64,000 nucleotides of DNA from Ophelia neglecta (Eukaryota): contig OZ260662.1 of the NCBI GenBank assembly GCA_965285935.1, forward strand, positions 34,658,001-34,722,000, read 5' to 3'. This document shows positions 3,716 to 50,740 of the stretch, one piece after another. Position 1 is the stretch's first letter, and each line of letters begins with the position of its first letter. The translations under genes and the position numbers were made by a program. The notes below the pieces were generated by a model that was given only the letters and a program-made list of their open reading frames with translations, made no database searches and was not told where the DNA came from.

Positions 3716-3757
3716 AGTGACTTGCTGGTGTTATTTCAGTCTTTCATAATTACATAC

Positions 3758-3888: not shown

Positions 3889-3966
3889 CTCAGCAAATAT
3901 ATAATGTTATCAAAAGATGCAGGGTCGGGTGATGAACCTGGATAAACTACTCAATTCGTTTGTTAT

Positions 3967-13500: not shown

Positions 13501-13861
13501 CTTCAACTTTTCTTCATTCCGACTGTTTAACTATGGACTGTTAGTAATTAGAACTTGAAAATGTAACCAAGGGATTAGATTTCAACCAAATTTACCAGCT
13601 GAGATGAAGGTGATGAAACAAATAAGAGTGTTGTTAAAATACCAGTCATCATGTCAGAGTCGGGCTCGTAAAATTGTCAGGGTATTGACGACATCATGCT
13701 TTTTTTCTAGGGAGGTGTGAGTGGATGGATACTGGAGTAGGCGTTATTCCTTGGCCAATCCTGTATGGCTGGTGTTTAGGTGATATTTCCTGTCCAATCT
13801 TGTGTATCTGTTGGGTACTAGAGATAGCTTCGTCAGTTGATCCATTTCCTCGTTCCCATAG

Positions 13862-13891
13862 TACTCTGTCTCTCATCTTAACCAGGTAAGA
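13862..13891 (+). other. Secondary candidate recursive splice site, junction 13885|13886
   Basis: tactctgtctctcatcttaacCAG|GTAAGA: pyrimidine tract with juxtaposed acceptor and donor. Confidence 0.45.
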
Positions 13892-21930: not shown

Positions 21931-21956
21931 CTTGAATTTTTTATGTTCAGGTAATA
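21931..21956 (+). other. Secondary candidate recursive splice site, junction 21950|21951
   Basis: cttgaattttttatgttCAG|GTAATA. Confidence 0.4.
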
Positions 21957-23456
21957 TTACATTGGCAATATCACCGGGACTAACTAGTGTAGCCAGACAA
22001 AGTGGCTAGCTTGTATTGAGTCACTCACAGTCCCCATCATCCATTTCCTAGGTTTTCTAGCTAGCATGGCTATTTTAAAAGAAGCTTCCCCACAGCTGTC
22101 TCCATATTCAGCTAATTGAATCTGAACCCCTGCAGTTTTCCACTTGAACACAATATAATTTGAAAGCCAGGAAACATGTTCCATTTTCATACTTCATTAT
22201 TTTCATCAGGATCCATTCAACTGGGCAGCATTCAGTTTGGAGCCCTGTCATTTCTTTGGGGCTCTGGATGAATCACTTTTTGAGATCAGGGTGAATTGAG
22301 TGATGATCATTTGTTAGGATAGCTTGGAGACAGGATTCTTCTGGGGTGCATAATTAGCAAATTAATGTGCTACAGTGTAATCCAATCTTGTGTAGTGCTG
22401 ATTATGAATTCATGTTCCAGCACAGTGATATTTGAAATAATGTAAAGCTATTAGGAAATCCAGAATGATTGACGGGCATTGTTCAGGGATGTTTTTGACC
22501 ATGCATGCAGGTATTATCTAGTCACGAATTTTTATGTAGTGGCAGAATACCAAAATCATTAGTCTGAAGTAGTCTGTGATTTGCTCCCAGCTGATCACAA
22601 TTTGTTCTAAAATTGTTCCTTTAGGCAACTGGTAGGTGTTCCTGCTTCATGAGGAATACAATGGTTGCTATCTATTTGTCACAATTACATTGCTGTTAAA
22701 CCTCTTTAAGTGTCTTTTTTCTGCCTGTGGGGGTGTGGATTGCAGGATATGAATGATACATATGCATGTCTGGAAGGTGTGTAAGGCATTTCACATGCTT
22801 GTTTTATGAGCCAGTACTTAACTCATCACCAGTGAGGGGATTCTGCTTGGAGCAAGCTAGACCTTATGAATGAAATATGCAATATACCATCTACATGGCT
22901 CCCTGCAAATACATGAACTGAATATCCAGATTGGAGATCAATGTACATGTAAATGTTCATCTCCATGTATATGTATGTCATTTCTCGCCATGTGGTGCAA
23001 TATTCTCTATTTACAAAGGAGTATCATGATATAAGGTTTCATTGTGCAGCATGTTGAATACAGCCGCATTCTGTCTGCTAGTATATTCCTGGTGTCTGTT
23101 TTAGTTTCTGGCAGGAGAATGTACTGTGATTGGTTTCTTATCGCTGACAATGAGCAGCATGTTTCCAAAGCCTGCCAGGCTGGCCAACTTAGCCACTCAT
23201 GGGCTCACTTCTACCCCCAAACTGAACTTGCATAGCTCATTGTGTAGTAATAAATCCTCTTGTATCTGGCAGGTCGGAAAGAAGGTGATACGAACCATTG
23301 AGGGCAGGTTATCAATGGACAAACAGAAAGGTGAATTATTAGATGGCATTATCTGGTTCCTGTCTTGCTGACAGTTTGTTTTACTTGATAGTCACATTGT
23401 CAGCAACTTTTGTACACACCTGTAAACTAGATAAGTTTGTAAAGACCAAGTTGCCT

Positions 23457-23522
23457 GGGGTGTAGACTGTCCGCAGTGGATTTACTGCCGGGGTGTAGAC
23501 TGTCCGCAGTGGATTTACTGCC
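23457..23522. repeat. Perfect 33-bp tandem duplication (GGGGTGTAGACTGTCCGCAGTGGATTTACTGCC x2)
   Basis: Units at 23457-23489 and 23490-23522 are identical. Confidence 0.95.
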
Positions 23523-26500
23523 AGATTGACGGCTTTACTGTTCAGTACCTGAAATCCAACATCACCGGCTGATTTCAGTGTCTTTTTTATGTTGCAAGCC
23601 ATGAACATCTGGAGTGTATGGCAATTGTTTCTCCAAGGATTTTCATCAGCACAGACCATAAAGTTGGATTTGGATGATATTAATCTTACTGTAATGTCTG
23701 GTGTTGATAACAAAATGGCATGTCTGTCTTTAAATGCAGCTATTGCTGTGGACAGTTAGAGACATGAACTATCGAGATGCAAATTGATACTACATCTATA
23801 CCTAAGTGTGAATTTATGCAGGGTATTTGTTTTCGTGGTTTTGCACAAAATGTGAAAAAACACAAAAATCATGGATCCCCCACAAGTGATATAAATGTAT
23901 AATTATGTAGTTATATTATAAATATGTGAAAATAAATTTTCAATAATATTTTTTTCCAATTAATCATAAAACTGAAAATATTTTAACTTACAAGTGAATT
24001 TTTCATGGTGTGTTTCAAAGCCATGTTAATGATCAGAGATATTGCCCACTTCTGTGTAAACTGTTACTAACACACAAATATTTGAATAATAGAGCAGATA
24101 AGGGGTATTATTGTAGATTTTTCAGTCAGTTTCATCAACAAAATCATCACTTTTGTGGATAGTAAAAGTCAACATGTAACCTGTAGGAAAGAACTTTTAA
24201 CTGCACATAATTACCACTTGCGTGACCTTGATTACAATCAGTGTTTGATTGTGGTTGAGATCATATTTTTTGGGGGAAACACAGAATATTCTTAACAGTA
24301 TGCAAAAGGAAAAGTAATGAATTTTCTGTGCAAGAAAAAGGAAGTTAACAAACTTGTGAGTTGAAAGTAGGCTTCTCATCCTTCTCAAACCATCTTGGAT
24401 AAAGACATGAATATGTGGCTGTATCCTAACTGCAGGGTTTGGGGAGGGGGGGGGTGTTAGGTTTTATCTATCAGCTATCTCCTGTCCGGAGGGTAGGTCC
24501 ATATGTCTCCGCTCAACTCCTGCCACAGAAACTTCCTGTGACATTACCTTGACTAAACCTGAGGTAATCTTCTGATATATGTGTACTAAATTTACTTTAC
24601 ATAAAAGATCAGCAGTATTTATCCCCTGATAAACCAACCTATCACTCAATGTAGTAGCCAGGTAGTGACAGGCTCCCGACATTTTATCTGCTGGCAGAAA
24701 GTTAGGCGGCTATTGAAGAAGAAAGCAAAGTAAATTCACCATCTCCCCAAGACAACTTGGCGTTTTAAAGAGCAGAACTGCAATTTGCCATCCTGTACCT
24801 ATGATCAATCATTCCACGATAATTTATAATCAGGTGTGGCTATCAGATTCAGGCTGCAGAGAGCTTCTGGGAAAGTTGTCGAATAATTTCTAGATTGGAT
24901 TTCCACCAACTCCGTGATCTGACGGCTCATCGCCACCCACTCCCCACAGCTGATGGCATCCGCTGGAAAGTGAACATTGCCACTATATTATCTCTATGTT
25001 TTAGGACAAATATAGGAACCTAGGAACCCTGATAATTGGGTTCTCAGGCCCAGGTTTTATGCTATGATATTAGTCAAGTATAATCATCAGTTGGCACTGT
25101 AAGTTGTCAGATTTACTTCATGATAGCAGCAGCAATTTGGTCTTAACTCTTGGATGGAAAACTGTAAAATCAATCACTCTGGTAAAAAAAAGTTGTACCA
25201 TGAAACTTTATTGATTATCAGTAATAGGGCTATTTTCTTGCCACCCATCTTTCCCGGACAAGACAAGTACTTGTTATGTTGTCTCCTTGTGGGCTCTCTG
25301 TGACTGGCTTTGAAGCTTGCCGTCTACTGTGAAGCTTTAAGGGCTGTCAACTTCCATACACCCAGGGCCCCACACCTAATACCCTGACCTCCAAAGTGGT
25401 CCTTGTCTCCTTCTCTCATTACTGCACATTATCTAGTGGAACTGGGGTGAGTTTAAGTCCACATCTCCACAGATACACCCACTCTGTCCAGCAGCAGAAA
25501 TCAATGCCGTCTCAAGCCGTCTTGGATTTTCATAAAGAAAAAGAGCTATTCATCATGCCCTCAATCACCGTAATGGACTAAAGAAATTGTGAAAATTACT
25601 CTAGAATGGAGCACTGACTGAAATAGTCTGGAGTCCGTCCCACCATAGTGTCCACAGTTGACTAAGCTACTGATGGTAAGAATGATTTATCGTTTGGCAG
25701 TTTCTTGCTATCTATCTATCTCTCTTTATGGCGAGCCTCTGAGTTAGGTACTTGGACAACTCTCTTCAACCCCTTGATTCAAGATGGACTCAAGATGCCG
25801 GACTTTGTTTTCTTGTCTGTTGGTATGTCCCTGCTGCATTTTTCTGACTTGGGATATTTATCATGCTCCATCAGAACCAATCAGAACATGTTAAAGAATG
25901 TCTGCTGCTGAAAAAGACCGGCTGAAGTTGCCAAATGAGTTGTGATGTACGGATGCAATGAAGTGTTAAACTTTTCATCTATGGTGAATGAAGCATGAGA
26001 CTCTGCAGATTAGTCCCTCTACTTTTTGACATGATATTCCAAGAAGATGTAATGACTGGCGACATGACAATTCTTGCGGAACTTGTCATTCACTGGACAT
26101 TTCACTTCCAAGTGGCTTCCCCACAATGGCTCGCATGCTTGTGGAGCCAGGCCGAGCAGAGGAGCAGACTGAGTGAGCAGCCCACATTTAATGTGGCCAG
26201 CCACATCAAGTCTGGAGTTGTTGTTTGACATACAGGGATAGTTTAGTTGATCAGAAATAGAAGTAGGAACAAGCTTGATTGAGTGTGTATAATTGTGGTC
26301 AAAACAGAGCAGCTAATTATCCTTGTTGAAATTAATCAGCTGGGAACTCCTCAGAGGAGCTTGGCTATTATCACACAAACCCTAGTCTGTCTCAGCTTGT
26401 TGTTTGAGTATACAAATCAGGGGTTTCTACACCCTCCTGGCAGTGACCCTGGTATTGGATGTTAGCCCCAGTGAGAGGGCTGGCACCCCAGGGCTGGCAC

Positions 26501-26636
26501 TCCTGTCTTGTGTGTTTGATCTACTTGTATGGTGCTGAGTGGAGAGAGTCTCTTAGTCACCAGGTCAGCCACAGGGAGTGTGGCCCTGTTTTAACACCCC
26601 CATATACTGCCATGCTGGGCAGGGTTTGGAAGCCAT

Positions 26637-27010
26637 CAGTCAGCCCCAGGGGGAGAACATCTGTCATTGGATCCTTGTGATACTGTCTGGCTTGGCTGAG
26701 TCTGGTATAGTACTGAAAACCATTGGTCAGCCCCAGGGGAGGAGATATCTGTCATAGGGCCCTGGTCATACTAGATTGTCTCAGGAGAGGGGATACAGTG
26801 GTCCCTGCGATGTAGGGTCACCCCTAAATCCAAGGAAAAGTGGCCCTACATTGCAGGTGGCCCTTCATCGGAGGTACTTTAACATAGAAAAGATAGGACA
26901 TGGGAATTCAAAACCTGTCCTGCCAATGCAGGTGGCCCTTCATTGGAGGGGCCCTACATCGCAGGGACCACTGTATCTGTCATAAGGCCCTGGTCATACT
27001 AGACCATCTC
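26637..27010. repeat. Degenerate local tandem repeat (..TCAGCCCCAGGGG..ATCTGTCAT..CCCTGGTCATACTAGA) interrupted by the MITE
   Basis: TATCTGTCATA(G/A)GGCCCTGGTCATACTAGA occurs at ~26746 and 26974. TCAGCCCCAGGGG occurs at ~26640 and ~26727. Confidence 0.7.
26796..26973. mobile_element. Tc1/mariner superfamily (pogo/Tigger-like) MITE, 178 bp
   Basis: Perfect 22-bp TIRs CAGTGGTCCCTGCGATGTAGGG / CCCTACATCGCAGGGACCACTG, flanked by TA (26794-95 and 26974-75). Internal repeat TGCAGGTGGCCCTTCAT x2. Confidence 0.92.
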
Positions 27011-29684
27011 TGAGCTAGGGTGTAGGATTGACATCTTTTCGTCTGCCCCAGGGTAGAGGCTGTGTTTAGCTGTATGGGATGCTGCACATGTATGTATTCC
27101 CCTGTACTTACAGCTGTTAGCCTGTGCATTTGATTGGTCAGACCTGAGTCCCTAGGGCTCTCCATTAGTTATTGGTCAATTCACAAATGCAGACAATCAA
27201 TTTTCATTTCCACACAGTGGATTCCACTAAAATTTATGTTGGAGAAGGAGCCCATATCCTGTGGGCCTGAAGGTACCATGGTGTGAATGCCTGACCTATG
27301 AGCATGCTTATCACACACTGTCTCTCCAAATTCCACCGGAATCTGCTGGGAATCTGCTGGTTCTTCAATGATGTAGGTTAGACTTTTATGTCAAGCAATA
27401 GGAGCTTAATTTGACACAAAAAACATGTTTAGATTTATTTTTATTGAGTGCTTGGGCACATAATGACTAGTGTAAAATACGGATGGAATTTATTTTAAGT
27501 GTGAAGATGTATATTGTAGGAGACAGGCAGCTGTCCCTCCCCCTTGTGGTATCCTCTCTGTGGTATCCCTCCTTGGCGTCCCCTCAATGTTCTCCCTGAG
27601 AAGTTACCTCCATGGTGGTTTAGCTTCCTGTGATGGGAGGTCCTCTCCCTCCAGGGTGGTCTGAGTGGCAGCTCATCCATGTGTAGTTGACTGAAAATTA
27701 TGGAACTGATTAAAAGCGCACGCCTATTTGGCTTCATTTTCCAGGGAGACAGTCTCTCAGACCATTAGACAGTGGTCAGTGAAAAAGAAAAAATACCATC
27801 TGGGCAAATGAAGAAATATCAGCAGGGACATTTGACTTCCCCAAAGCACCAGTTTCAGATTTTTCAGTGTCATTTTAATTAAAACAAATACACACATAAG
27901 ATTTATTTTCTTTTCTTTGGCTGCAGAAAAGCAATTCCCAGAATCACTTGTTATCGTATTGCCATAAATGTTCATTCCTACTCCAGCAATGAATCAGCGT
28001 GTAGGGACAGTTTTATTTCAATGCCAGTAAAATGTCGTAGCCTTTTCATTTTGCTCTGGAGAATGTTCCAAGGGTCAGATTGTGTAATACCAGAGGACCA
28101 TCCTGAGTTACACAGTTCCTCCAGATAACCATATTTTTGCCTGAGCAGTTTGGGCATCATGTGATCCAAGCTAAGATAGTTACCATGATAAATGGTGAGT
28201 GTTGTCAACCGAAGTGGAAAGAATTGATAAATCAGAGCGATCAGTTTAGAGATAGAGCTCCAGAAACTGTGTGGGACCGGAGTAACTTTGGTAATGAGGG
28301 AGCAGGGGTCAGAGGGGGCAGGGTGTAGAGCCCTCTGATTTCAGACAGAAATATATCTTAGTCATTTCTCCTGGTGATTCTATGATATATGCTTGGTGGC
28401 TGTGTTCTTCATACTGGACAGAAGCTCAGGATGGTGCGTGTCACAGTCCCTGATTATTGGACTCCCTGTGATACTTCATGCTGTGCTTGGCTCAGTGTCT
28501 CCCTGAGCAGTCAGACTCCACCAGATTCTTCAAGCAAATACAATAGATTTGCCTATTAGTAGTCATTGACATGAACAAACAGAATATCCTGGCAAGTCCT
28601 GTCTATTAAGACTGACCTCTGTAATTTGGAATTACCTCAAATCATACAAAATGTATGAACCACTGGCAGAGGCATGTCCAGGAAAACCTAACTTTAAAGT
28701 TTGGTTATCCCACTACATGTAAACCAGTTTCTATTGATTTGGTTCCATCATTATTAAGCCTGAAACATTTTTTGTCAATTGGTAAAGTTGGACCAAAATG
28801 ACCTGCATTGATAGGCACAAATTTTGATCCAATTATTAGTGGTATGATGGGATCAATCAGTGTAGAGTATGAGCCGAGACAGATTTTCTCTTAAAATGGC
28901 TGACACTTTCAATTTAGATCTATAGTTTACAAGTATGGGCCCTTCTCTGCAAGATTTGGCTGGCTCCTCATTTGGCTCTGATCGCAATTAAAACTACACT
29001 TTTTAACCAAGCCTTGACATTTTGTAGAAATTGGTTGGCACTTTCACTTGGCTCTCTGCTCACTGGTAAGCCTCACCAGCATCATCTGGTTCAATAATAT
29101 CCCATATAGCACCCTGGTCAGATAGATTTCAGCCAGGGGTAAGATTAGCTTAATGTATTGTGACAGTAAAAGACTATTGATTCTGACCCTGTACTCATTC
29201 AAGCCTATAATTGAGAAGTGGCACTCACTTGAAGTAGGCTAGGCTTGCTAACTGTGGCCTCAAACTTATCAAATTTCATATTGATTGCTACAATATTTGG
29301 CAGAAAATTTGCCCAAACTACTTGATTAATGATATACAGATGTGGAGATATAAACAATATAATTCTTCATTGACTTCAACATTTATCCTAGTTATGATGG
29401 CAAGAGAATAACCATGCTGTACCCAGAGTACACCTCCTTAGCTACAAGACTTAGGCCAGGCTGGTCTCTGACAAGATTGATGATGGCTCCAGCAGTGCTG
29501 TATTGGTCATTAAGCTCATACCTTCTATAGTATTACTTCTATCAATTTTGCTGTCTGCCCACAGATTTCGCTTATCTGTTTGCTTCTAATCTTAGCAATT
29601 CATTGGTTTTCTCAACAGGAGTTCTTGTGATCCTCTCAGTGGTATCAGTGGTGTGCCACTTGGCACTGGGATCAAAGTACTCAT

Positions 29685-29748
29685 AGGTCACAGACAACCT
29701 GACCTAGATGTGCATGTCAGAGGTCAATGATGGGTCAAAGTGGGGTCA
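29685..29748 (+). promoter_or_regulatory. Cluster of five nuclear-receptor half-sites including tandem DR5-DR5
   Basis: AGGTCA 29685, TGACCT 29700, AGGTCA 29721, GGGTCA 29732, GGGTCA 29743. The last three are each separated by exactly 5 nt. Confidence 0.45.
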
Positions 29749-30100
29749 AGAGCATAGGTAACATTGGAGAGATGCTGGTGATGTCCTCAGGGTAATTACA
29801 GATGGAATCCCTCTAAGAATCTTCTCCTCTCCAAGGTGGTCAAGGGTTGAAATGTCAGTGAGGCAGCCAGGAATGCAGCATATCTGGCAAGTTGGGTGTT
29901 CCATGGTGTCTTCTCTCTCATAATGACTTAAACCGACCTAGGCCATCATGATTTGGGAGGATAGGAGGTGTGCCTAAATGTCAAACTGCACAGCATGCAG
30001 AATGTAATTCCAAGACCAGCTCAGAAATCAGCCTTGCCCTGGTACCCTATCTTTGGATATTCACCTGTACTACCAGCTTTGTGGTCCCTTATTTATAGAG

Positions 30101-30570
30101 CTCCCCTTGCTTCCAATGCTCTCCCAATCACTTGTGAGCTCCCTATTGTCTCCCCCACGCCCTCTGGACTACTATACTCTCCCCATCACTTGTGGGCTCC
30201 CCATGGTCTCCCCATCCCCTCTGGCCTCCTAAACTCTCCCCATCATGTGTGGGCTCTCCAATGCCCCATCCCCTCTGGGCTCATAAACTCCTCCATCACT
30301 CATGGGATCCCCATTTTCCCTCTGGACTCCGGGTGCTCTCCCCATCACTTGTGGGCTGCCCATTTTCTCCCAGTCCCCCTGGACTCCTCTATGCTCTCCT
30401 CCATCACTTATGGACTCCTTAGTTTCCCTCTGGACTCCCTATGCTCTCCCCATCACTTGTGGGCTGCCCATTTTCTCCCAATCCCCTCTGGACTTCTCTA
30501 TGCTCTCCCTCATCCCTTGTAGGCTCCCCACTCTCTCCCCATCTCCCCTGGACTTCCCTTGCTCTCCTGA
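30101..30570. repeat. C-rich degenerate minisatellite, ~8 units of ~50-59 bp (core CTCCCCATCACTTGTGGGCT...CCCTCTGGACT)
   Basis: Core recurs at ~30121, 30179, 30236, 30289, 30338, 30397, 30445 and 30505. It explains the repetitive ORFs at 29968-30913. Confidence 0.9.
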
Positions 30571-33277
30571 ACCTCTGTGGCCTCTCTACGACATCCACTC
30601 TTCCCTCAGTAAATCTGTAGAAAGCCACCTGGAAATGACTGTGAGACTCCCTGGGCATTACTGGTGTCCTGTGTCACATTACCAAGTAATGTATAGCACT
30701 GTTACTGTCCAGGTGATCAAGCTGTATTGTATTACCTCAGTGCCCTTTCGTAAAGCCTCATTCATTTTCTCTTTACTTCGAAATTTCCTTCTACAATGTT
30801 TTTGTGGATCTCTGAGGAGCAATAAATTAATTTTGCTTTTGGGAATACAAGCAAACACCAGGCATACTGGACTAGATATATCCCAGTTTATGTATAGCCA
30901 AGTTTCCTATTAATCTTGAATAAGGATTTCAGCATCTGCCTTTAAGCCGTAGAAAGTCTGGGAATGAACGTGACTGCCTGTTATCTCAGGGCTTGTTATT
31001 CTGTTCCATAAATCTAGAGCAGAGCTTTCAGGCAGCTTTGCTTTGCTTTCAAATAATTATGGGAGAATCCTGACGGATTGACCCATTGCTAGAATATGAA
31101 GAATGACGTGAGGTAGGGGCAGGTTTCTGGCTCAGTCCTATGCCAGAAGGATGCCACCTGTATTGTCTATGAACTGGAGGTGAAGGCTTAGAGGTCAGAA
31201 GCTGGTGACAGTGAGCGCACTTCTGCTGGATTTATGTTAAGTTTTCTGTGGCTGGCCATTTTTGTCAAACAGAATTATAAATCAGCAGATAGAAATGTGT
31301 CACTAGAGGCTTGATTTGGCTGTTCTTTGTCAAGGAATTGTTAGAGTGAAGTCTCCTTTGGGAGAACCACTGAATGTCTTAAGGCTCAATTGACATTTGA
31401 AAGATGTATATTAAGAAAATGCCTGAATCTGGAATTCATTTCACTTTACATCAGCACACATTGTTAACTTGCATCATTTAATTGGGTATATAATGAAGTT
31501 TCCATGGAGACAAGGCTCTGATATGATATGAAATACTGTTGGCTAGCAACCATTAAAGTTTGATGACATTTTATACGATAGCGCCATTTTTGCATCAGTT
31601 TCACAAGTCATTAACAAATTTGTTTAATTATTTTTCTTCTGATCACAGTCTACACAGAAATAATTTGGACACTTTGAAACCAAAAGTCAGATTTTGTGTG
31701 TGTATAGCCATCAGTAAACGTCTGGACACATCAGTTCACGCTTGATGGCAACAAATCTATGCGGGCAACTACAATATGTTTGATGTTCACTGTGTTCAAT
31801 CCTTTTACATGTAAGTCCTTGGCCAAAAAAGCTGGAATAGGCTTTCAAAATTAATTTTTAAGGCATTCACACCTACAAAAGTTAAATAGTTATAGATTAT
31901 ATTTTACAATGATGTAATGTTGACAAACTGTGACTTGGACAATGTTTTGGGTTTGTCTTACTGCAGGGCAAAAAGAACTGCACAAGGTGAATTACATAGA
32001 TATTTTAAATCCCATTTTCTCCAGGATATATACTTTTTAGTTGAAAAAGGTTATAAACATTAAAGAATGGCAATAGCTTGGTCCTAGGTTTCAAGTCTAA
32101 TGGCAACAACTAGAATGCTTAATCAAGAATTTTGCAAATACCACACATGTTAACAGAATACCAATGTGTGCTGCTGGCCCTCGGTACTAAGACCATGCTG
32201 GCTGATCTTGTGTAATGTACATATGGCTGTGTGTAAGCCTTCAGGGTATAACCAGAGATGCAGCCAAAAGCATTGCAGGCTTGGCTCCTAAATACCATGA
32301 GTAAATTGTAAAGGCTCTTTATTTGTGGGCCTCTGGGATATGCCACTGACACACTCCTATATGTCTATATGTCTACTTAGATTCAGAACAGGTGACCCTG
32401 CGCACGTTTGAATAAATCTGATTAAAGTACTGATGAAATTGGTGGCGGAATGTCAGAGTCTGAGGAAATTAAAATAACCCTTGTTGTCCACAACTCAGTG
32501 AGTCTGCCCATAGTTTACTAAATAATTGTCTACAGGTTGCAGTGTCAGAAAACTGCTTTACACTCAATAAATCAGAAATCTGCATCTTTTAGCAAGCTCC
32601 AAAAGACCCATTACTTGCTCAGTGTATACATAACTTTGTACATATTACTTTATTTTTGTTTTGTTTTTTAATATTCTGAACATGTGAGAACAGCTTCATA
32701 TTTACATGGGCTCTTGATCTCTGCTGCTGCATGCAGGCACACCTATAAGAATACCCTGGTCTCTCATCAAGGAAGTTTATGAAGACTTAAACAGTGATTT
32801 ACCATGTGAATAAGAGGGTGATTCTCTTGTTGTTAGAGTTTATGGTTAATTTATTTGCATGTAATGACTGAACTCTGTTGGTCAATTGTAGCATAAATAT
32901 TATTAAGTTGGGTTTAATCTGCCCTGAGTTTAGTTTTTTTCTTCTCCACATTTAACCAAAACCAGTATTCACGTTCCATGCTTTCATGCATCTCACTTTA
33001 TGACCATTTTTGTCTTGGTAAATATATTAAACATAAAATTTATTCATTTTTTAAGTAAAGCAAGTGACAGATTAATGGTGAACTATGGTTCATGTATAAA
33101 GTCTACTCCACTCATGGGACCACTGGTCTTCTAATTATTTCCAGTGTATAAAGTAGTTGGCCTTCAATATCCAGCCAGAAGCCTGCCTTTAACAAATTTA
33201 ACAATATCTATGCCATATTTTCATGAGAAATGTTTTTTATATCCATTATAATCCAATACACATATATTATTTATAAT

Positions 33278-33310
33278 CTAACATATATTTTATTTATGTT
33301 TCAGGTAAGT
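33278..33310 (+). other. Candidate recursive splice site (ratchet point), junction 33304|33305
   Basis: CTAAC branch motif at 33278-33282, AG-free U-rich tract atatattttatttatgttt, then CAG immediately followed by GTAAGT. Confidence 0.75.
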
Positions 33311-34969
33311 AATGGCAGGGTGGGATGATATTTCACCAGACATTTGGTATCGTACAGGACATGCCAATGTATAGAGGAAGCACAGCTCCTAACAGTTTCA
33401 CCAGCACTTGGTCCAGCCTTTCCCCTTACGTGCCATGTAATTCATTGGTAGCCATTATATTGCTTCAAGTCTTGGTAAGATATTTACAGTCCGTCCTTCC
33501 TGGGTTTTATGATCTTACATGTTGCTGCTAAGTGTTAGCGGGTCCCTGTAAGCCACAACTAGCGATCCAAATGGAAACCTATATCTTCTAAACCAGGTAA
33601 TGCTCCAATAATGCCTCCAACTACTGTCAAAGCTCATCACAAGCTGATGGCTGATTTCTACCTCCAGCCAACCAAGTGGCACCAACATGAACTGCAAGAG
33701 TTGGGAGTTAATGCAAACTGAAATGAATTATCCTATGGGAAGATGTGGTATTAAATCATTTTCATAAGATATTCCATGAAGCATTCAGTATGCATGTGTA
33801 GGGTCTTTCTGTGGTTTACAAGTAGCAAACAGAGTTTCTTCATAGCTCATGTCCTTTTATTTGTGTATATTCAGTGTGCAGTTTTTATATGATGCAAAAT
33901 TCAATCCAAATCCCAATTTTTCTTGACCTAAATACATGCACCATAAAACTAGCAGTATGCAATTCGTCATTGGAGAAATTTGGGTCAGGGAATGACCCCC
34001 GGGTCAAACATGAGGCTGCCCTCTGAACTCATCCATGACCATGTTTTCCTCTCAAATTTCATATCAGTAAACTATTTCGACACCTTATCTGGAATTATGC
34101 ATATTATTTTACCCTGCTGGATCTCAACATATGACATTCTGTGACATTTGCCTCCTGAGTTTAGATACCGCTTGGCACCCCTTTATTAAGATGTCAGCAG
34201 GGGGGGTCTTCCCAAATTGGCTGGTGAGTTTGAGGATTAGCAGTGATGCTCTGTTCTGCTCCGGGTTGCTTAGTTTATGGCAATATTGATAGTTTTATGT
34301 CATTATTTTTGTCCATTTATCATGATCCTATGTCATGCTGTCACAGGTTGATTGTGTTTTTAGTAGCCAGCCAAATTAGCTGGGCTATCATGCAGGAGAT
34401 GGCCACATAGTCTGCACGAGGAAATTGTACATCATGAGAGTCTTTAACTGATTTTCCTCAAGACCATTTTCCGTCTTTTGTTTTATCCTAGTGTCCCAGC
34501 TAATGGTTTCCGGTCATAATGTGATAGTGACCAGGACCTTAACCCAGGCCTCCTCAGCAATATCACTGGCCGCTGAAGGTTGATGCTCTATACAGGGACC
34601 ACCAGGCATTTGTAGGTTAGGCTTGTTAGGCTTCTGCATGTAGAACTCCATCCACTATTGTCCTAACCAGGAAACATGGGACAGGTGGACAGAGGATGAA
34701 AGTTTGAACAAGGGACAATCCAGGCTATTTTTCATATTAGCTGAATATACATCCTGAATCAGGATATTGTTAAGGGAGAATACATCACAGGATACCATGA
34801 ACAGCCGTCACATACATTACCCATGTCTAAACAGAAAGTGGCGCCAGTGATTATAAAATGGCATGTGGGGTCTAATCTGGTAGACTGACAATGAGCTCTG
34901 GATCACTACGAGATTCAGAGATACAAAACTGAGGGTGCAATACATCCCTGGTCAATAAGGGGGACACCA

Positions 34970-35482
34970 AAAGCTCTGAAAGCTCTTGTCTACTTATCTT
35001 TTCAAAGAGAGCTTCAAGTCTCCCAAAACTCTTGTCTACACCTCTTGTCACTGGAAGGAAGGCTAAAAGCTCTCCAAACTCTTGTCTACAAATCTTTTCA
35101 ATGGAAGAATCGATTTCCTAAACTCTCGTCTACATTGGTTGTCAATGGGAGAGACTGAAACACCAATCTCCCAAAACTTGTCCACATACATACAAGCTCT
35201 ATAGGAGACAAACCTTTCTGCTCAAACTCTTTTCGACTTCTCTTCTGAATGAGAGAGAGAGACCAAAGCTGCCAAGAGTCTTCTCTCCATGGGAGTCTCA
35301 AATCTCCCCAAACTCTAGTCCACATCTCCCCCAATGGAAGGTTCAAATAAACCCCAAAACTCTTTTCTACATCTTCTCTGAATGGAAGACTAAAATCACC
35401 AACAAAACTCTACATCTCTTGTCAGTGGGAGACTCAAAGCTGCCAAAATTCTTGCCTTCATTTCCTCTCAATGGAAGACTAC
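34970..35482. repeat. Old degenerate minisatellite, ~11 units of ~45-50 bp (core AAACTCTTGTCTACA...TCAATGGAAG)
   Basis: Core recurs at ~34981, 35026, 35076, 35121, 35174, 35224, 35310, 35356, 35405 and 35445. Confidence 0.8.
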
Positions 35483-38400
35483 ATGTGTTGGACTTCTGTC
35501 ATAATTCAACACTGCTTGGTGTTCTCCCAGCTGGCCATGGAAACTTTTATGTTGATCAAGCCTTTGTGGAACTAAAAATGTCTATTACAGATTTCCCCTC
35601 CCTCCCATGTCCCCAATACAAAAGAAGATGACACCCTGCCACACCCTTCAAGTGACAATGCATTATCTAATGGTCCCATCCTATTGTTTTGCATAAAAGA
35701 CAATGCATGTATTTAAGCATCATTATATTAACTTAAAATGGAGGTGAAATATGGAAACAGTTGCTAAGCTGAAGGCATGGATGAATGCACTACACTGACT
35801 GTAGACCAGCTAAAAGATTTCTCATTATATTTCTTCAGTGAGTCATTTGATGTCAGATAAATTGCTGATAAGAACATGTGCAGAATTATAATGCAGTGTT
35901 TTGATTGAACTCCCTGTTTTACTTGCTAAATATTAATAATATTTAGCATCTTATTCAAATCAAGCTGGTACCTGAACATTACCATTTACTTCAAAGCCGA
36001 TCAGTGGTCAAATCTATAGAGTAATGACCAGAGATGACAACAAATATGATTTAGTGGGCATTTAATATGCTGGATTGAGGTAAATGGCATTTTTGATGTC
36101 ATGAAAATTGGGACATGCATCATTCTGTGTCCCTGTTGCAATTACTAGTAATTAAAAATAATGATTTCAGTGTCTCAGCCGTGGATGTGAGATATTGTAG
36201 CTGACCTCAGGAGAATCAAAGCCAGCAAATACAACTCATCCATTATTATCACAGCCAAATTGTGATGGTAGACTTCATTCTGAAAACACTTTAAATTCCT
36301 AATAGATAATGCAATACTAATAGATTGACCAGTCTAACCCATACCTTGATAAGGGAATTTAAAATTAACAGGTAAATTGACTGTTCAGTGTATTAACATT
36401 ATGAAATGCAAGACAGAAAGGTGCCCAGGTTAAATGTGTATTCTTTGAATAATCTTTCCTCTTTAGTGTTGAGTTTAAGGCTTTTCATGCATTTTAATGC
36501 ATATTGTATGGCCTACAAGCACATGCATGTAAATTTTCATGTACATTAGATCATTAATTATGAATGCTGTAGGAAGACAATGGACAACTTGTCTGACAAG
36601 ACAACAGCACGGCTGGTGCCCAGATGAGAGAGACCAGTAGAGATCTGGATCTTCTGGCTGATAGTCTGACCTTCTCACAGAGTAAACTGGGCTCTAGGGA
36701 GGTCATTAAGTCAATATTAAAACTTATGATTTTATCAATGAACTTTTGCATGGCATTCAACTGAGGGCAGATTCTACACACAGAGAAATATTTTAACTGT
36801 TCTCAGCATGAAATGACAATTAGTTGATTACCCAGGGAGCATTTGGTGAGAGGCTGGTGCAAGTGATGAAAGTAGCAAACATTTGGAATTTATGGTTTAT
36901 GCCATTATCTGCATTTTTTGTCAGGTTTTTTTCTGTGATATTTCCACCATGGGACCTTGTGTCAGGAACAGAATGATTTGATTCATTTTAAATTACTTAT
37001 TTTGCTTGCATGTATTCCAAGTGGAGATCTTTGAAACCTATGTTATTATCTAAGTTTTCAAATGCCAGTTGCTTTCCATAATGTCTATTGCGTGTTATAT
37101 CTCTATGGTTATACTTCAAATATTTTACACCCTAGACAATTATAGCTTGTTTATCAATGTACAGAGCAGGAAGTTTGACAGTTGCAGGCTTTTATGACCA
37201 GCTAAAATTGAACAGCTAGCACCCATGTAAAAGTACAATAGTTATTATTATTTTGTATCGCCTTGCCTTTGATCTTTTTATGCCTCTCTGTGACACTCTC
37301 ACACTCAGATGGGTTTATCATGAGGCCAGTGCTGGTTTTTGCCATGTGAATTGTTACACTAAGCATAGAGCCTCCCAGAGGGTGGCCATTACTTGAGGAC
37401 ATTCCTTGTGACATGGTTAATGCCTGCCTGGAGGCTTCTCACTGTCAGTAGTGAGGGGTTTTGTAGGGAGACTCAGTTACTCATGATGCTGGCCATTTTG
37501 AAGATCATGTTGATAGCTGTGTCACCTGCTTCTGCTCAGGTCATATGTCAATTTCCATATCTCCACCTTAAACTCACCAATGACCTTACAATTTGTTTTT
37601 TATATTGCCATTTTGTTGGCATTGGTTTTCATGGACGACTGGCAATTGTCAGACTCGCAGTACACTTCAGGTTTTCAGAGGTTTTATTGGTTTAGTCAAG
37701 AATTGCGTCTCCCTTGTGATCCCATCCAGTGATTAAATTAATCCAGATATTAGTCATACTATGATTTGTGTGTGTGTGTGTTTATTATATAGAAAGAGTT
37801 CCTGCAGTGCTACAAACAGAAAAGTACTTTTTTTGGTCCTTGTTGATCATGTTGTGTGGGAAAAAACTTGAAATAACAATTTTTGATCAGTCCTTAGATA
37901 GCAGGAAGCCTGGTGCCCCTTAAAAGCTTAATAAAAGATAGCCAGATCGTGGTACGGTTCTATTTATCTATGATTATATTGGACATGTGCCCTATATTTT
38001 GACTTAAAAAAAAGATACAGTGTACATGCTTATAATTTCAATGCATTATTGATTCAGTAAAAAGACCAATGGCCATCAGGTCCCGATAGCATGCCACCAG
38101 ATCTTTGATCAGATTCGTCCCATACAGTATTAGACCAGATTTAATGCCAAAGCAAAGTTTGACATCTGTGCCATGTTGGGCTTTTGTTGATTTAAAAATA
38201 TAAAGGCCGAGCCTTTTTCTTGGGCCTTTCAGTCGTTCTGATGGGGGGTTTTGTTGAACTCTTCCTGTCATGGTTTTTCCCCATTCTGATATGAAATGCG
38301 AGACAGTCCTGACAATGGAATCCAGCACCATCTGCTTCACAAGCTATGTATGTTGGCTAATATATATTCTTCATATGATGTATTCTGTAGTTTCATACGC

Positions 38401-41205
38401 TTGTATTATGAAATATGAATGCAATTGTCAAATAATTATACTAGTGGAAGCAATTAGTGATATCATTTTAGGTAAAAGGTGATAAAAAGTAAGAAAAGGT
38501 GGGCTTTCTATTTCTTTATATTCAACTTTAGGTATTCAGCACTTGCAGTCTTTTGGGCTCAAGGCAGTTACTGACAAGGAAGGCCTAGTACACTTGTGCT
38601 CAGTAATACTATGGTTACATGTAATTTACTAAGAAAACTTTAGGACCAAGCACGGATATCAACTGAACTTGTTTGTAAATTACACTGTAGATATATTACT
38701 CATTCAAAGTAATCACTGGTTTGTAACATGACAGATTTTGTCTTTAGAAAACTGTTGGTTGATATAAATTAACATAAATGTTGATATAAATTTAAAAAAT
38801 GCATTAAATGAAATATCAACAGAGTTGTAATCTTAATCTGTGTGATTTCTTTGGGTTTAATAACATAATTATACTCATTCTTGTAGATTAATTGGGCTGC
38901 CAAGAATAACTAGGCGATTAGAAAAAAAATGATTATGACTTGAACTGATTCATTCTAGCGAATAATTGTAGACAACTTTACAAAACTTACGATGCAGGTT
39001 CTATCAATATTTTCAGCAAAAACTACATCGATAAAACCCGTTTAAAGCTGTATGATATTTGATATGTTTTTAAAGTGTGCCTGCATGTGCGACTATAGAA
39101 TAGCGATTGCCATTGAAAACGCTGTGATCTCAGATGATGATATTCACACATGCCTGCTGGTTATTATGTAATTATATGGGCTGCCTTTTTTACAGTAATA
39201 ATTTGTACTGATATACCACCTAGTTTACATAAATCATTGTGGATGTGCCATGATACATGCATCACAAAATGTCATTTAGATCTGTAATTTAACCTTGAAA
39301 ATCCTATTTTTTAAAGAAAAATAAGAACTAAAGTATAGTTTATAGGAAAATAATGTACTGTATTTAGCAGTGAGAGCTAGGGGTGTAAAGATGCATATGT
39401 TAGTTCACTTTTAAGTATCAAATTGCTGTCTGCTTTCTATACACTGTCCTGTATATCAGACACAGAGATAAGATGGGTCTCCCAGAAGATATAGTCCCAT
39501 CTCATGCTAAGAACTCCACCCCAGTGTCATAAAGTTCTCCTCCCAGTGAACTAAGGAGGCAGATTCTGTTAACCTTACCCTATTCCTGGCAGGAATGCAG
39601 AGCTGGGCTTCTCCCTGCCCTTTAGTTTCTTATATTTCACCTTGATCATTGATGTTTGGTATCAATCCAGCGGGATAGGACGCTTGGCGCACCAGACACT
39701 TCTCATGTTGTTTTGTAAGCCACAAATACAAGACTACCTTTAATCATCCACAAGCCAGTACACATGTCTAATAAACTACCAGTAATTTACAAACTTTGAC
39801 AAAAACCAATGCAAAGCATGGCTAAGTCTTCTCATTTGATCCTTGCGGCATTCTGACGATGATACCAATTTCACCTATTCAGTTACTACTTTTCTTCTGG
39901 CGGTTTCTCCCAGTTTCAAATGCAACACCACTGATAATTATAATGAGTCAAGTTTGCAATGTCATAGTGCTTTTTTGATCTGGGAATACTTTTATGATTG
40001 TACTTTGCAGCACCTTAGCCATAGCTGCAATCTTAGCTTTCATATAACTTTCCCTACAGAGCTCAGGTATGAAAAACCTATGAAAAGATGATACCTGAGA
40101 TTTGCAGTCTTTATCAGTTGTCATAATTTGCTGATGATTTATTTGAAGTATCAGGGACTCTGGCTTGTGGAAAGTCTGCTGGAATCCAAGAAATGTACTT
40201 TAGGACCAGGTCTGGATAAACACGGGCAACTTGTGTAGATTACACCTGATGATAGCAGGGTTTGAACTCGAAATATCACACCTGAACTTAATACACAGAC
40301 AGTGGAAAACAGCAATATCAAAGAACCATTTTCCTGTCTTGACTTCTACATACATAAATGCATTTTACCATTGGATTCTCCTTGATTTTTTGTCTTCAAA
40401 GCCACATGGTTGTTACATTTTTTTTCTATATTTAAGTGGTGTATTTTATTTTATTGTAGTAAAATAATGGCTGGTATTAATAATCTGTTTGACAGATGTC
40501 TACTTATTTGTCTATTTAAATTCTCCTTTCAGCATTATGTTGAAAGTCAAGCCAATATCAAGTGCCAGTGTTTATACAAAAAGCAGCTGAGGAGAGAAGG
40601 AGAAAAGAGTGTTTTTGTGAGTGGTGTTTCCGTTTCTGTTATTGGTTACCTAGCTGCCCTGATGTTTTATTGAGGTACCCTAAGCCAGAGGATCAACAAG
40701 CCTCATGCCAGGCACCAGATAATCTCTATGGCCCATCAAAATGTCAGATATCATACACTACAGACATGTTATGAAATCATATCGACCACCAGTCCTCAAA
40801 CTTACCATGCCAGTCAAACCTTCTGATATTGGCAAAATTTTGCATGGTTTACTAGCCAACCAGCAATGATTTATTGTAATATGTAGAAAATAAATTGTAT
40901 CTTAATGCAGCAACATCTTCAGTGTTCCATTTTCTAAGCAATATCCTGATTTTGAAACCTCTTACGCAATCAAGTTCTGTTCTGACATTTGCAAGTTAAA
41001 TCCTTTTTCTTTATTTTTACAATTCAGTTATTTTTCTCTGCCACTGTTATCCTATCAAATTTATAATTTCATTGTATCTTTTTCTTTGATCCTATACTGG
41101 GGAGTGTGAGATTAAGTCATTCTTGAGTTAATACAAATGAGAGGTTTTTATAGGAATTGCCCAATATTTTGTGGCTTCCTGTGTCCTGCAGGCAGAGCTA
41201 TCTCT

Positions 41206-41248
41206 TCTGGCCTGTATTAGTGACATGACTTCTCTGGCCTGTATTAGT
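41206..41248. repeat. Short tandem duplication (TCTGGCCTGTATTAGT x2, 27-bp period)
   Basis: Seen directly. Confidence 0.8.
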
Positions 41249-43687
41249 CACATACCTGGTGCCTTACTGATAACACCTATAAGAAAGCTGTTTGGGGACT
41301 AGCGGCCCACTGCTCATCTCAGTATTGATTGATTGCTTTGTTCAAAACGACCCCTGTATGACTATGAATAGATCCTTTCGAATAGATCCTTTTTATGTCC
41401 AGTGACTATTGAAGTAAAGTTATGTGATTTGCAGTCTCACTTCAATATAGATTTACCAAGAAACTCACATGTGCACACAGTTTCTGTAATATATGTGAAC
41501 AATTTGTATCCCCAACAGGCTGTCAAACTGACTTGCTATGCCACCTCCTTATATGCAAGTGGCTTATTGTGTATGGAATGAGAACTGGCAGCTGGATGCA
41601 GTTTTTGCACTTTATCCACAGAAAGAGTAGCCAAAGGGATAATTCTTGGTATCCTAATAAATTATTTGCCACAAGTTTATGAAGCAGAAAGGCAGTTTCT
41701 TTCAAGTTGTTAACCACACATCATTGAAGGGCAACTTGTTTATTTCCTCTATCTTCAGGAGGAGAAAAAATGGATACTCAACAGTAAATAGTTATATACC
41801 TGACAAAACACCTGATAATAAGAGTAAGTGGTTGTCAGGGGAGTATGTAAGATTATCACCGACCACCCACACTGTCTTCTCCTCATCTCCTGTGTAATGC
41901 CATCATTATCAGAACACATTAATCATATCCTGAGCAAACAGACACTTTAGACAGTTTCATATCTCAAAAATACTACAACAAAGGTCAGTCTCACTATATA
42001 GGCTGTCTAAGTCATTTAAGCCATCACTGACTTTGTCAGAAGGAAAATGCTGCTACTTAGGGCCTTATTGAGGTGCTGATGGCCTCTTGGCACTCTTTGT
42101 CAGAGTTGTTTTTGTTTTCCTGACAAAGTTGTCATATATTTTATATTTATGATAAACGAGCTGAGTTGTTCAGGGATGAATGGGTCGGAGTGATTCTGAT
42201 TGGTTGGCGGGGTGTGGTGGAGTGCTGCAAGCCTCATTTGTCCACCTCTTCAGCTTCACCCTGGACAGAAGGGGGCAGCTAGGATAGTTAGACACATACC
42301 TGGTAATGTCAGCATCACCAGTCCTCCTTACCTGACAGGATCTGATGTGAATGTCAAATTGTAATTCCACTCAGGAATATAGATCAATGTCATATGATAG
42401 GGGGTGTAGGTAAAGGTAACTATTTGATTTGACAGGAAGGTGAGTGATTTAGGTTCCAATAGGCACTGGTAGGAAACATTTATTGATTGGGATCATCTCC
42501 TGCCGGGCCATATTTCACATTTACCATGTCTGAACTTCATACGGCTTGACTTGTGATATAAAATTTCCCGTTTACCAGCCTCTGTGAATTGCTCAATCCA
42601 CATTAATCATTTTCCACCCCATTTCTCAAACGTATTGCTTTCGGGAGGTAAATTGAATTGGAATATTTTATTCATTCTTTGACCAATATGAGTTTTCAAG
42701 CTTAAAGCGTTCAGTGAAGATAGGATTTTGTGGGAGAAGCATAACATCTGAATTATGTAAAAACAAGCACTTTCATTTCCACTTATGCATTCCCTTTGAT
42801 CATCCAACATCTGTTCATAACTCTCTCCTTGGCTCTGTTTGAAATTATACTGCTTGAAAACAGTTAAAAACTGTCCGGCCCAAGGTCAGCTCCATGACGT
42901 ATAGATGTCAGTGAGGATAGCGGCACTTTGCTTTTTAAATGCTTGGTTGGACAGTTGTTTTATTGTCAGTTATTTATGTGTGATCAAAGTGTTAATTAAC
43001 CTTTTAAAATGCCAGTAAAACATTTTATTTTCCAAATAGCGTGAATTTGTAAAATATCTTCTAATGTTTCATGGTACGTAGTTGTTAAATACATTCAAAA
43101 TGAGTGCTGGGCCAAATAAAACCCAGAATGGGGTAGGAGAATAAAAGTTGTGTTTTGAACAAGTATTTGATATTGAGAAATGGCAAAATTTGATGCTCCC
43201 CGAAATTATGTTCTATGGTGCATTTTTTGTAAACACTACTCAGTTACCAGTGTATCAAACACCTGTACTTGTACATATACCATACCAACAGATACCACAT
43301 GTTTTACTACAGTGTGCAAATATACACTGTCAATTACACTTACGAGCTGCATATTTACAACAAATGGGCTGTTGGCCAAATAAATCATTTTATAGTTTCC
43401 ATCAAATGTTGAGTTGTTATTGTTTTTGCAATTGCTAAAGATATTAAAAATTTATCACCAATGCCCTGCACCTATTGTGATTCATCCTGTTAGCCTTGGG
43501 CACTTTTTTGCTATTGGTGAAATATATGCATTGTGCTTTTGTCATGATAGATTGAGCTGTTTGTGGGTAAGGTTAAGCTTATTGGAATGTAATGGATGAG
43601 TTTGACAGAAGTTTCATTATTTACAGCAGAACCTTTGTGTTGGACTCCCTAACTAAGGCGTGGACGTGGTATGTACATTTGTACATA

Positions 43688-43701
43688 GTGCCCCCTGGTT
43701 G
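43688..43701 (-). promoter_or_regulatory. CTCF-like motif CAACCAGGGGGCAC
   Basis: One mismatch to the CCASYAGRKGGCRS consensus. Confidence 0.35.
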
Positions 43702-49420: not shown

Positions 49421-49515
49421 CATATATATATATACGTACACACATATATATATATATATAAAGTATATATATAAAGTATATATATAAAGTATATATAGAG
49501 TATATATAAAGTATA
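49421..49515. repeat. (TA)n microsatellite grading into (AAGTATATATA)n
   Basis: Seen directly. Confidence 0.9.
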
Positions 49516-50647: not shown

Positions 50648-50740
50648 CACAGGCCTAGCTGTAGGGGCTTGGATAGCATGTCAGGTATGACACCGGCACA
50701 GGCCTAGCAGTGGGGGCCTGGATAGCTTGTCAGGTATGAC
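50648..50740. repeat. 49-bp period imperfect tandem duplication (CACAGGCCTAGC...GGATAGC.TGTCAGGTATGAC x2)
   Basis: Copies at 50648-50691 and 50697-50740. Confidence 0.85.

What the first reader, a model, noticed from the sequence alone, without database searches (positions are those of the whole stretch)
33278..33310. Consensus recursive-splicing (ratchet) site in the middle of the 50-kb RYK first intron
Seen: CTAAC (branch A at 33281, 23 nt upstream of the junction), an AG-free U-rich tract, then CAG|GTAAGT, i.e. a strong acceptor fused to a perfect donor core. Splicing exon 1 (...TTAG) onto 33305 regenerates TTAG|GTAAGT, identical to the native exon-1 donor, and splits the intron into 28,732 + 21,098 nt. 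Known: this zero-length-exon architecture defines recursive splicing in long Drosophila introns and in long vertebrate neuronal genes. Inference: this invertebrate RYK removes intron 1 stepwise. To my knowledge recursive splicing is poorly documented outside insects and vertebrates.
Basis: partly seen in the sequence, partly recalled or inferred. Interest (0 to 1): 0.85.

Follow-up and report, generated by a model that had tools for sequence, protein, structure and literature searches.

The report
Candidate recursive splice site in RYK
A textbook "ratchet point", a splice acceptor fused to a splice donor, sits in the middle of the 50-kb first intron of a lophotrochozoan RYK receptor gene; sequence statistics suggest the intron may be cut out in two steps, but no RNA data exist to show it.

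Summary
CTAAC lies at 33278-33282, followed by an AG-free U-rich tract and CAG|GTAAGT at 33302-33310. It is on the sense strand of the 49,830-nt first intron of a WIF-domain RYK gene, and it splits the intron into 28,732 + 21,098 nt.

The bare 9-mer is not beyond chance in the window. The full composite (core, tract and branch point) is expected only about 0.005 times per intron strand.

Genome-wide, branch point + tract + AG|GTAAGT sites are enriched over a reversed control (14/40 against 2/34, p=0.002), and this site is one of the 14. An analogous complete site lies on the sense strand of the 45-kb RYK first intron of the nemertean Lineus longissimus (chance about 0.01-0.03). None was found in five shorter orthologous introns or on any antisense strand.

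Against this: no RNA run exists for the organism, no close relative is available, and the tract is the weakest of its class. Same-strand clustering of the motif turned out to be a duplication artefact, because the control shows it too.

Verdict: a plausible recursive splice site with a 170-nt cryptic exon that would carry an early stop codon (about 50%). It is unproven. First-stage notes of this scan flag similar sites elsewhere in this genome, including an Eph gene.

The parts
4461..4572 (+). RYK exon 1, coding part: signal peptide and ...LDLFMNETETRRLL, ending in phase 1 with TTTTAG
   Evidence: The peptide matches the N-termini of Lingula, Dreissena, Lamellibrachia, Patella, Pecten and Lineus RYK. 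The intron position and phase are shared.
4573..54402 (+). RYK intron 1, 49,830 nt, GTAAGT...TTTCAG
   Evidence: It is the only giant intron; the rest of the gene is compact (54.4-65.9 kb in window + L002 coordinates).
33278..33282 (+). Candidate branch point CTAAC (A at 33281)
   Evidence: A YTRAY match 23 nt upstream of the acceptor with no AG in between.
33283..33301 (+). AG-free U-rich tract (14/20 pyrimidines counted over -4..-23; T at -4, -5 and -6)
   Evidence: It resembles the real acceptors of this gene, which are TTTCAG/TTTTAG type.
33302..33310 (+). Ratchet-point core CAG|GTAAGT (junction 33304|33305)
   Evidence: It is unchanged in the second haplotype contig.
33305..33474 (+). Putative cryptic RS-exon, 170 nt. 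In the frame set by exon 1 it reads Gly-Lys-stop.
   Evidence: frame check and list of downstream donors.
33472..33480 (+). Candidate RS-exon donor TTG|GTAAGA. It matches 6 of 9 consensus positions, against 8 of 9 for the regenerated TAG|GTAAGT.
   Evidence: GTAAGA donors are used elsewhere in this gene. The second haplotype has T>C at 33473.
54403..54539 (+). RYK exon 2 (start of the WIF domain)
13865..13891 (+). Weaker second ratchet-like site, CAG|GTAAGA (junction 13885|13886). The tract is 15/20 pyrimidines but there is no AG-free branch point.

Best explanation
The site is a recursive splice site (ratchet point) of RYK intron 1.

Proposed mechanism, inferred from sequence and not shown by RNA: once RNA polymerase has passed about 33.5 kb, the acceptor at 33304 is recognised. 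This uses branch point CTAAC and the U-rich tract, and is probably helped by exon definition with the donor at 33475. Exon 1 is then joined to 33305, removing the first 28.7 kb as a lariat. The join recreates TTTTAG|GTAAGT, the same donor as the native one and stronger than the downstream TTG|GTAAGA. That recreated donor is used next to splice to exon 2 at 54403, removing the remaining 21.1 kb together with the 170-nt cryptic exon. If the weaker donor were used instead, the mRNA would carry a stop at the third codon after exon 1 and should be degraded.
For: 1. Every sequence element is present at the stated coordinates, and the regenerated donor equals the native one.

2. T at -5/-6, as in 196 of 197 fly ratchet points (Duff et al. 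preprint 10.1101/006163).

3. The site is on the sense strand, at 58% of the only giant intron. The antisense strand of the intron has no comparable site.

4. The composite is expected about 0.005 times per intron strand. The exact 12-mer has an observed genome density of 0.009 per 49.8-kb strand.

5. Genome-wide, CTAAY-N12-30-TTYAG|GTAAGT sites with an AG-free spacer of at least 64% pyrimidines number 14 of 40, against 2 of 34 for the reversed control (hand count; Fisher p=0.002). All 14 have different sequences, and this site is one of them. Y8-N-CAGGTAAGT occurs 66 times against 29.

6. Independent replicate: the 45.1-kb RYK first intron of Lineus longissimus has a complete site on the sense strand (CTAAC, 17/20 pyrimidines, CAG|GTGAGT) that matches its own native donor hexamer GTGAGT. 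The expectation over the six other introns tested is 0.0125. Antisense strands of all eight RYK loci have none.

7. A downstream weaker donor and an out-of-frame cryptic exon fit the RS-exon model (PMC8605326).

8. The alternative haplotype keeps the motif.
Against: No RNA evidence of any kind: the only public runs holding the stretch are DNA contigs of one sample, colinear and without joints.

No close relative exists in the searchable collections. The best RYK relatives are only 55-64% identical, so conservation of the motif is untested.

Orthologous first introns of Patella (37 kb), Pecten (35 kb), Lamellibrachia (24 kb), Lingula (10 kb) and Tubulanus (6 kb) have no such site.

The tract (11/17 pyrimidines in the spacer) is among the weakest of the 14 class members.

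The bare 12-mer is enriched only 1.5-fold over its reversed control (268 against 174). By my own estimate, not measured here, part of that excess may be ordinary exon ends.

Look-elsewhere effect: a reader scanning about 186 windows of this genome would meet roughly half a chance site of this quality.

In vertebrates recursive splicing is reported to be rare (abstract of PMC8797253). That most high-scoring motifs there show no detectable use is my own background knowledge.
Confidence: 0.5

Rival explanations
1. Chance motif. An AT-rich intron happened to produce a branch point, U-tract and CAGGTAAGT in a row. The spliceosome ignores it or uses it at noise level, and intron 1 is removed in one step.
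For: The 9-mer is within chance for the window. The 12-mer's reversed control still occurs 174 times in the genome. Reversed composite sites with a good spacer do occur (2 of 34). The site's tract is weak for its class. Three orthologous introns of 24-37 kb manage without such a site.
Against: The complete composite is expected about 0.005 times per intron strand. The class it belongs to is about 7-fold enriched over the control. A second complete site lies in the same intron of the same gene in Lineus. Sense 2, antisense 0 over 360 kb of RYK loci.
Confidence: 0.33
2. Regulated poison (cassette) exon rather than a splicing aid. The 170-nt exon 33305-33474 is included in some conditions, using the donor at 33475. 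This places a stop three codons after exon 1 and lowers RYK output through nonsense-mediated decay.
For: The acceptor and a usable downstream donor GTAAGA bracket a 170-nt exon of normal size. Inclusion gives Gly-Lys-stop. The same architecture was noted separately by the first stage (s1-735145). Expressed RS-exons are known (PMC8605326; PMC6224609).
Against: The regenerated donor (8 of 9 consensus positions) is stronger than the downstream one (6 of 9). In flies this competition leads to constant skipping (PMC8605326). No RNA shows inclusion. One haplotype changes the -2 position of the downstream donor (33473 T>C), which suggests little constraint on it.
Confidence: 0.1
3. The site belongs to something else: an exon boundary of an unannotated nested or alternative transcript, or a U1-binding site that only suppresses premature cleavage in the long intron.
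For: GTAAGT alone is a perfect U1 site. Long introns often carry such sites.
Against: No open reading frame of any length ends or starts in frame at the junction. No Rfam family matches anywhere in the window. The stretch is not a repeat. A U1-only role does not explain the branch point and acceptor directly in front.
Confidence: 0.05

Closest known systems
Drosophila intronic ratchet points (Ubx, kuz, luna; Hatton 1998, Burnette 2005, Duff 2015, Joseph 2018/2021)
   Same: Juxtaposed acceptor|donor (Y)nNCAG|GTAAGT. T at -5/-6. Sense strand of an intron of about 50 kb (kuz intron 3 is about 50 kb with two ratchet points). The regenerated donor is stronger than the donor of an out-of-frame cryptic RS-exon.
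   Different: The organism is a lophotrochozoan, not an insect. The cryptic exon would be 170 nt, against about 50 nt in flies. The pyrimidine tract is interrupted by A. The genome-wide excess of the motif is modest (1.5-2.3-fold against a reversed control), whereas more than 20-fold sense against antisense is reported for fly long introns (PMC2773006, a different control). Conservation and use are unproven.
Vertebrate recursive splicing through RS-exons in long neuronal genes (Sibley 2015; Blazquez 2018, PMC6224609)
   Same: Long first intron of a neural-development receptor gene. An RS-exon of ordinary size is defined by a downstream donor. Inclusion would give a premature stop.
   Different: Vertebrate sites were defined by junction reads and saw-tooth coverage. 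Here there is sequence only.
Computational ratchet-point enrichment in non-insect invertebrates (Shepard et al. 2009, PMC2773006)
   Same: Sense-strand excess of ratchet-point-like motifs in large introns, taken as a sign of recursive splicing outside insects (sea urchin).
   Different: That study had no lophotrochozoan and no single-site analysis. This genome has no annotation, so sense against antisense could be scored only at RYK and at one Eph gene.

Membership tests
Recursive splice site / ratchet point | Acceptor and donor juxtaposed at AG|GT, with a consensus tract before and GTAAGT-like donor after | tested here: met
   CAG|GTAAGT, 14/20 pyrimidines upstream, CTAAC at -23, no AG in between.
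Recursive splice site / ratchet point | TT at -5 and -6 of the acceptor (196 of 197 fly ratchet points) | tested here: met
   (T at 33299-33301); criterion from preprint 10.1101/006163.
Recursive splice site / ratchet point | Lies on the sense strand deep inside a long intron | tested here: met
   28.7 kb into a 49.8-kb intron of a gene on the + strand.
Recursive splice site / ratchet point | Splicing of the upstream exon to the site regenerates a functional donor | tested here: met
   By sequence only: TTTTAG|GTAAGT is identical to the native donor through +6.
Recursive splice site / ratchet point | Cryptic RS-exon with its own, weaker donor downstream, usually out of frame | tested here: met
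   TTG|GTAAGA at 170 nt, and a stop at the third codon. The exon is longer than the fly norm of about 50 nt (PMC8605326).
Recursive splice site / ratchet point | Junction reads from the upstream exon to the site, lariats ending at the site, saw-tooth nascent RNA coverage | not testable with these tools
   no RNA run holds the stretch; the three runs are DNA contigs.
Recursive splice site / ratchet point | Core motif conserved in related species while the flanks drift | tested here: inconclusive
   No close relative is available. Among six distant orthologous first introns, only Lineus (45 kb) has an analogous site, and its flanks are not alignable. Both haplotypes of the sequenced animal keep the motif.
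Recursive splice site / ratchet point | Motif class enriched in the genome beyond composition | tested here: met
   (1.5-fold and 2.3-fold). (complete composites 14/40 against 2/34, p=0.002). Same-strand clustering is not usable as evidence.
RYK receptor tyrosine kinase gene (host gene) | WIF domain followed by a tyrosine-kinase-like domain, with the RYK-type motif in the catalytic loop | tested here: met
   Pfam WIF on two exons. Kinase exons in L002 carry HKDIATRN. Alignment to annotated RYK of 20+ species.

The most novel reading that the evidence does not exclude
Recursive splicing is used in Lophotrochozoa. This genome carries a selected class of complete ratchet points in long introns of signalling-receptor genes. 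These include RYK, the introns flanking the ligand-binding exon of its single Eph gene, and same-strand arrays such as five sites in 86 kb on contig C5. Very long RYK first introns acquired such a site independently in two phyla. That would make stepwise intron removal a shared bilaterian solution rather than an insect and vertebrate speciality.
Probability: 0.45. Interest if true: 0.6.

Novelty: new member of a known kind. Interest (0 to 1): 0.45.

Why it matters
Recursive splicing has been shown experimentally only in insects and vertebrates. Whether it is an ancestral bilaterian way of handling very long introns is open. In the literature searched here I found no report of recursive splicing in molluscs.

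This report offers a concrete, testable site in a lophotrochozoan RYK gene. It also offers a second candidate in a nemertean RYK gene and about a dozen further complete sites in the same genome. One RT-PCR or one total-RNA library could settle the question.

If the site is real, it also predicts a simple switch: weakening the regenerated donor would include a stop-carrying exon and reduce RYK, a Wnt co-receptor. If it is not used, it is a useful example of how convincing a chance ratchet point can look.

Tried and rejected
1. Same-strand clustering of TTTCAGGTAAGT (24 same-strand against 8 opposite-strand neighbour pairs within 100 kb) first looked like arrays of ratchet points. The reversed control motif shows the same pattern (21 same, 1 opposite). 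Clustering therefore reflects local duplications and is rejected as evidence. Only arrays whose members have different sequences remain suggestive.

2. RNA evidence: the one run search found no RNA run. Laying the three runs showed colinear DNA contigs only.

I did not try to obtain those letters another way.

4. Close relatives: a search with the kinase exon was blank. All 273 RYK-like proteins retrieved are at most 64% identical. The Dreissena, Haliotis and Gigantopelta genes are too long to be served. Liolophura and Pomacea are not on record.

5. Flanks of the own site and the Lineus site share nothing beyond the motif.

6. The antisense open frame next to the Lineus site has no Pfam match.

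7. An alternative coding first exon ending at 33304 is rejected, because the frame that would fit exon 2 has a stop and no ATG.

8. A known structured RNA is rejected: Rfam finds nothing in the window.

9. The 1.1-kb stretch without haplotype differences just upstream of the site is not used as evidence. Contigs of a heterozygous sample can switch haplotype, and 22 differences were not listed.

The reading frame of the cryptic exon was checked in a script only.

Full report
WHAT IS THERE. CTAAC is at 33278-33282. A tract without AG follows (13 T, 1 C, 5 A and 1 G over -4..-23), with T at -4, -5 and -6. CAG|GTAAGT is at 33302-33310.

The host gene is RYK on the + strand. Exon 1 runs from the ATG at 4461 to 4572 and ends TTTTAG|GTAAGT. 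Exon 2 starts at 54403 and encodes the start of a WIF domain (Pfam PF02019). Further WIF and kinase exons follow compactly up to about 65.9 kb in window + L002 coordinates. The exon 1 peptide and the position and phase of intron 1 match RYK of Lingula, Lamellibrachia, Patella, Pecten, Lineus and Tubulanus.

A CWC15 homologue lies head to head upstream, as in Lingula, Lamellibrachia and Lineus. This supports 4461-4572 as the true first coding exon. The intron is 49,830 nt, and the site splits it into 28,732 + 21,098 nt. The closest RYK proteins are annelid, mollusc, brachiopod and nemertean at 55-64% identity. The animal is therefore a lophotrochozoan without a close sequenced relative in the collections.

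IS IT MORE THAN CHANCE? The 9-mer alone is not. It is expected 0.47 times per window, and 35 of 100 shuffles have at least one.

The full architecture is another matter. Under an order-3 Markov model of the intron, the core is expected 0.25 times per strand and core plus tract 0.04 times. Core, tract and an AG-free YTRAY branch point together are expected about 0.005 times. In 368 kb of strand sequence held from this genome, it is the only site that passes. The observed genome density of the exact 12-mer corresponds to 0.009 per 49.8-kb strand. The stretch is single copy, carries no long open frame and matches no Rfam family.

A reader who scans about 186 windows of this genome would still meet roughly half a chance site of this quality. 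The local figure alone therefore does not decide the matter.

GENOME-WIDE TESTS. TTTCAGGTAAGT occurs 268 times against 174 for the same letters read backwards. Eight pyrimidines + N + CAGGTAAGT occurs 66 times against 29.

Many hits lie in same-strand pairs 10-100 kb apart, which at first looked like arrays of ratchet points. I listed the control motif too. It shows the same pattern (21 same-strand and 1 opposite-strand pairs, against 24 and 8 for the real motif). This clustering therefore reflects local duplications and is no evidence.

A sharper test used the composite CTAAY-N12-30-TTYAG|GTAAGT, whose matched letters are printed. There were 40 hits against 34 for the reversed pattern, so there is no excess in number. 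However, 14 of the 40 have an AG-free spacer of at least 64% pyrimidines, against 2 of 34 controls judged by the mirrored rule (hand count; Fisher p=0.002, or 0.0035 without the site under test). The 14 all differ in sequence, so they are not repeat copies.

Several of them sit in same-strand groups with other motif hits of different sequence. Examples are five sites in 86 kb at C5:87.52-87.61 Mb, and groups at C8:6.41-6.45 Mb, C9:6.94-6.98 Mb and C2:8.05-8.10 Mb. The single Eph ligand-binding exon of the genome (C2:29209429-29209887, + strand) is flanked 18 kb upstream and 16 kb downstream by + strand motif hits. The upstream hit lies at the place of a first-stage note on Eph intron 2.

This genome therefore does seem to hold a selected class of complete acceptor|donor sites. 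The RYK site is a member, but one with a weak tract (11/17 pyrimidines in the spacer).

OTHER SPECIES. Sequence conservation could not be tested, because no relative is close enough. I asked instead whether the orthologous first intron carries such a site elsewhere.

Intron 1 is the giant intron of RYK throughout:
- Tubulanus, 5.9 kb
- Lingula, 10.3 kb
- Lamellibrachia, 24.3 kb
- Pecten, 35.4 kb
- Patella, 37.1 kb
- Lineus, 45.1 kb
- this genome, 49.8 kb

With the same criteria, only Lineus has a complete site. It has CTAAC 27 nt upstream, 17/20 pyrimidines, and CAG|GTGAGT. It lies on the sense strand 18.0 kb into the intron, and its donor hexamer equals the native Lineus donor TTAG|GTGAGT. 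The expectation over the six introns is 0.0125, or about 0.03 with the slightly wider core defined beforehand.

Over about 360 kb of RYK loci from eight species, complete sites number 2 on the sense strand and 0 on the antisense strand. Weak look-alikes show no strand bias, 15 against 15. The flanks of the two sites share nothing. If both are real, they arose independently or have drifted beyond recognition. The two longest introns have a site and the shorter ones do not. That fits a length-dependent need, but the numbers are small.

MECHANISM (inferred). The acceptor resembles the real acceptors of this gene, which are TTTCAG/TTTTAG type with mixed tracts. At 170 nt downstream lies TTG|GTAAGA, a donor type used elsewhere in the gene. 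In flies and vertebrates a ratchet point is first recognised as the acceptor of a cryptic RS-exon, and the stronger regenerated donor then outcompetes the exon's own donor (PMC8605326; PMC6224609). Here the regenerated TAG|GTAAGT matches 8 of 9 consensus positions, against 6 of 9 for the downstream donor. Skipping is therefore predicted. Inclusion would read Gly-Lys-stop.

WHAT IS MISSING. No RNA run exists for the organism. The three runs that hold the stretch are DNA contigs of one sample, colinear with the window. They show a second haplotype that differs at 33314, 33321, 33448 and 33473 but not within 33278-33310. This is weak support at best. Junction reads, lariats and saw-tooth coverage, which are the defining evidence for recursive splicing, could not be examined.

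VERDICT. My estimates are:
- about 0.5 that the site is used for stepwise removal of intron 1
- about 0.33 that it is an unused chance motif
- about 0.1 that its main role is a regulated poison exon

If real, it is a new member of a known kind of element in a clade where I found no report of it. A 2009 survey did predict ratchet points in sea urchin.

Noticed in passing
L019:19076-19145 (Lineus longissimus RYK intron 1; junction after 19136): A complete ratchet-point-like site on the sense strand of the 45-kb first intron: CTAAC, 17/20 pyrimidines, CAG|GTGAGT. Its donor hexamer equals the native exon 1 donor. No GTRAG donor lies within 300 nt downstream. A short antisense open frame without a Pfam match lies next to it.
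   Followed up: partly
G000 C5:87523601-87609671 (- strand); also C8:6409137-6447048 (-), C9:6943581-6981831 (+), C2:8049646-8101390 (+): Same-strand groups of acceptor|GTAAGT sites with different sequences, spaced 17-40 kb apart. Several have CTAAY branch points and clean pyrimidine tracts. They are candidates for multi-step recursive introns. The flanks could not be fetched.
   Followed up: partly
G000 C2:29191047-29191065 and C2:29225584-29225597 (+), around the Eph ligand-binding exon C2:29209429-29209887 (+): The genome's single Eph ligand-binding exon is flanked on both sides, on the sense strand, by CTTTCAGGTAAGTG. The upstream copy lies at the place of first-stage note s1-733664.
   Followed up: partly
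G000 C9:59132491-59224272 (-), C5:105675537-105743910 (-), C12:52144701-52210650 (+), C2:61663452-61766709 (+): An arbitrary control 12-mer (TGAATGGACTTT) also forms same-strand clusters at 10-90 kb spacing. This points to many local tandem or segmental duplications in this genome, and is a caution for any clustering argument.
   Followed up: no
window 595-3888 (- strand): Exons of a CWC15 (Cwf_Cwc_15) homologue lie head to head with RYK. The same neighbour sits upstream of RYK in Lingula, Lamellibrachia and Lineus. This is conserved synteny and probably a shared bidirectional promoter region at 3889-4460.
   Followed up: partly
window 29968-30913 (+): Two overlapping open frames of 184 and 203 aa are built from a repeated Pro/Ser/Leu/His-rich unit (PIPSGLL.SPHHLWA-like). 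They lie inside the GC-richer part of the intron (24-32 kb, GC 0.42-0.43 against 0.36-0.39 elsewhere). This is probably a minisatellite or a degraded element.
   Followed up: no
window 31717-33850: One contig of the alternative haplotype has 15 differences in 31717-32207, none in 32208-33313, and 9 in 33314-33850. This may be a haplotype switch within the contig or a constrained 1.1-kb block ending at the candidate site.
   Followed up: no
window 54400-54408: Exon 2 itself begins with GT (cag|GTATCC). The mature exon 1-exon 2 junction therefore reads TAG|GTATCC, a weak donor look-alike.
   Followed up: no
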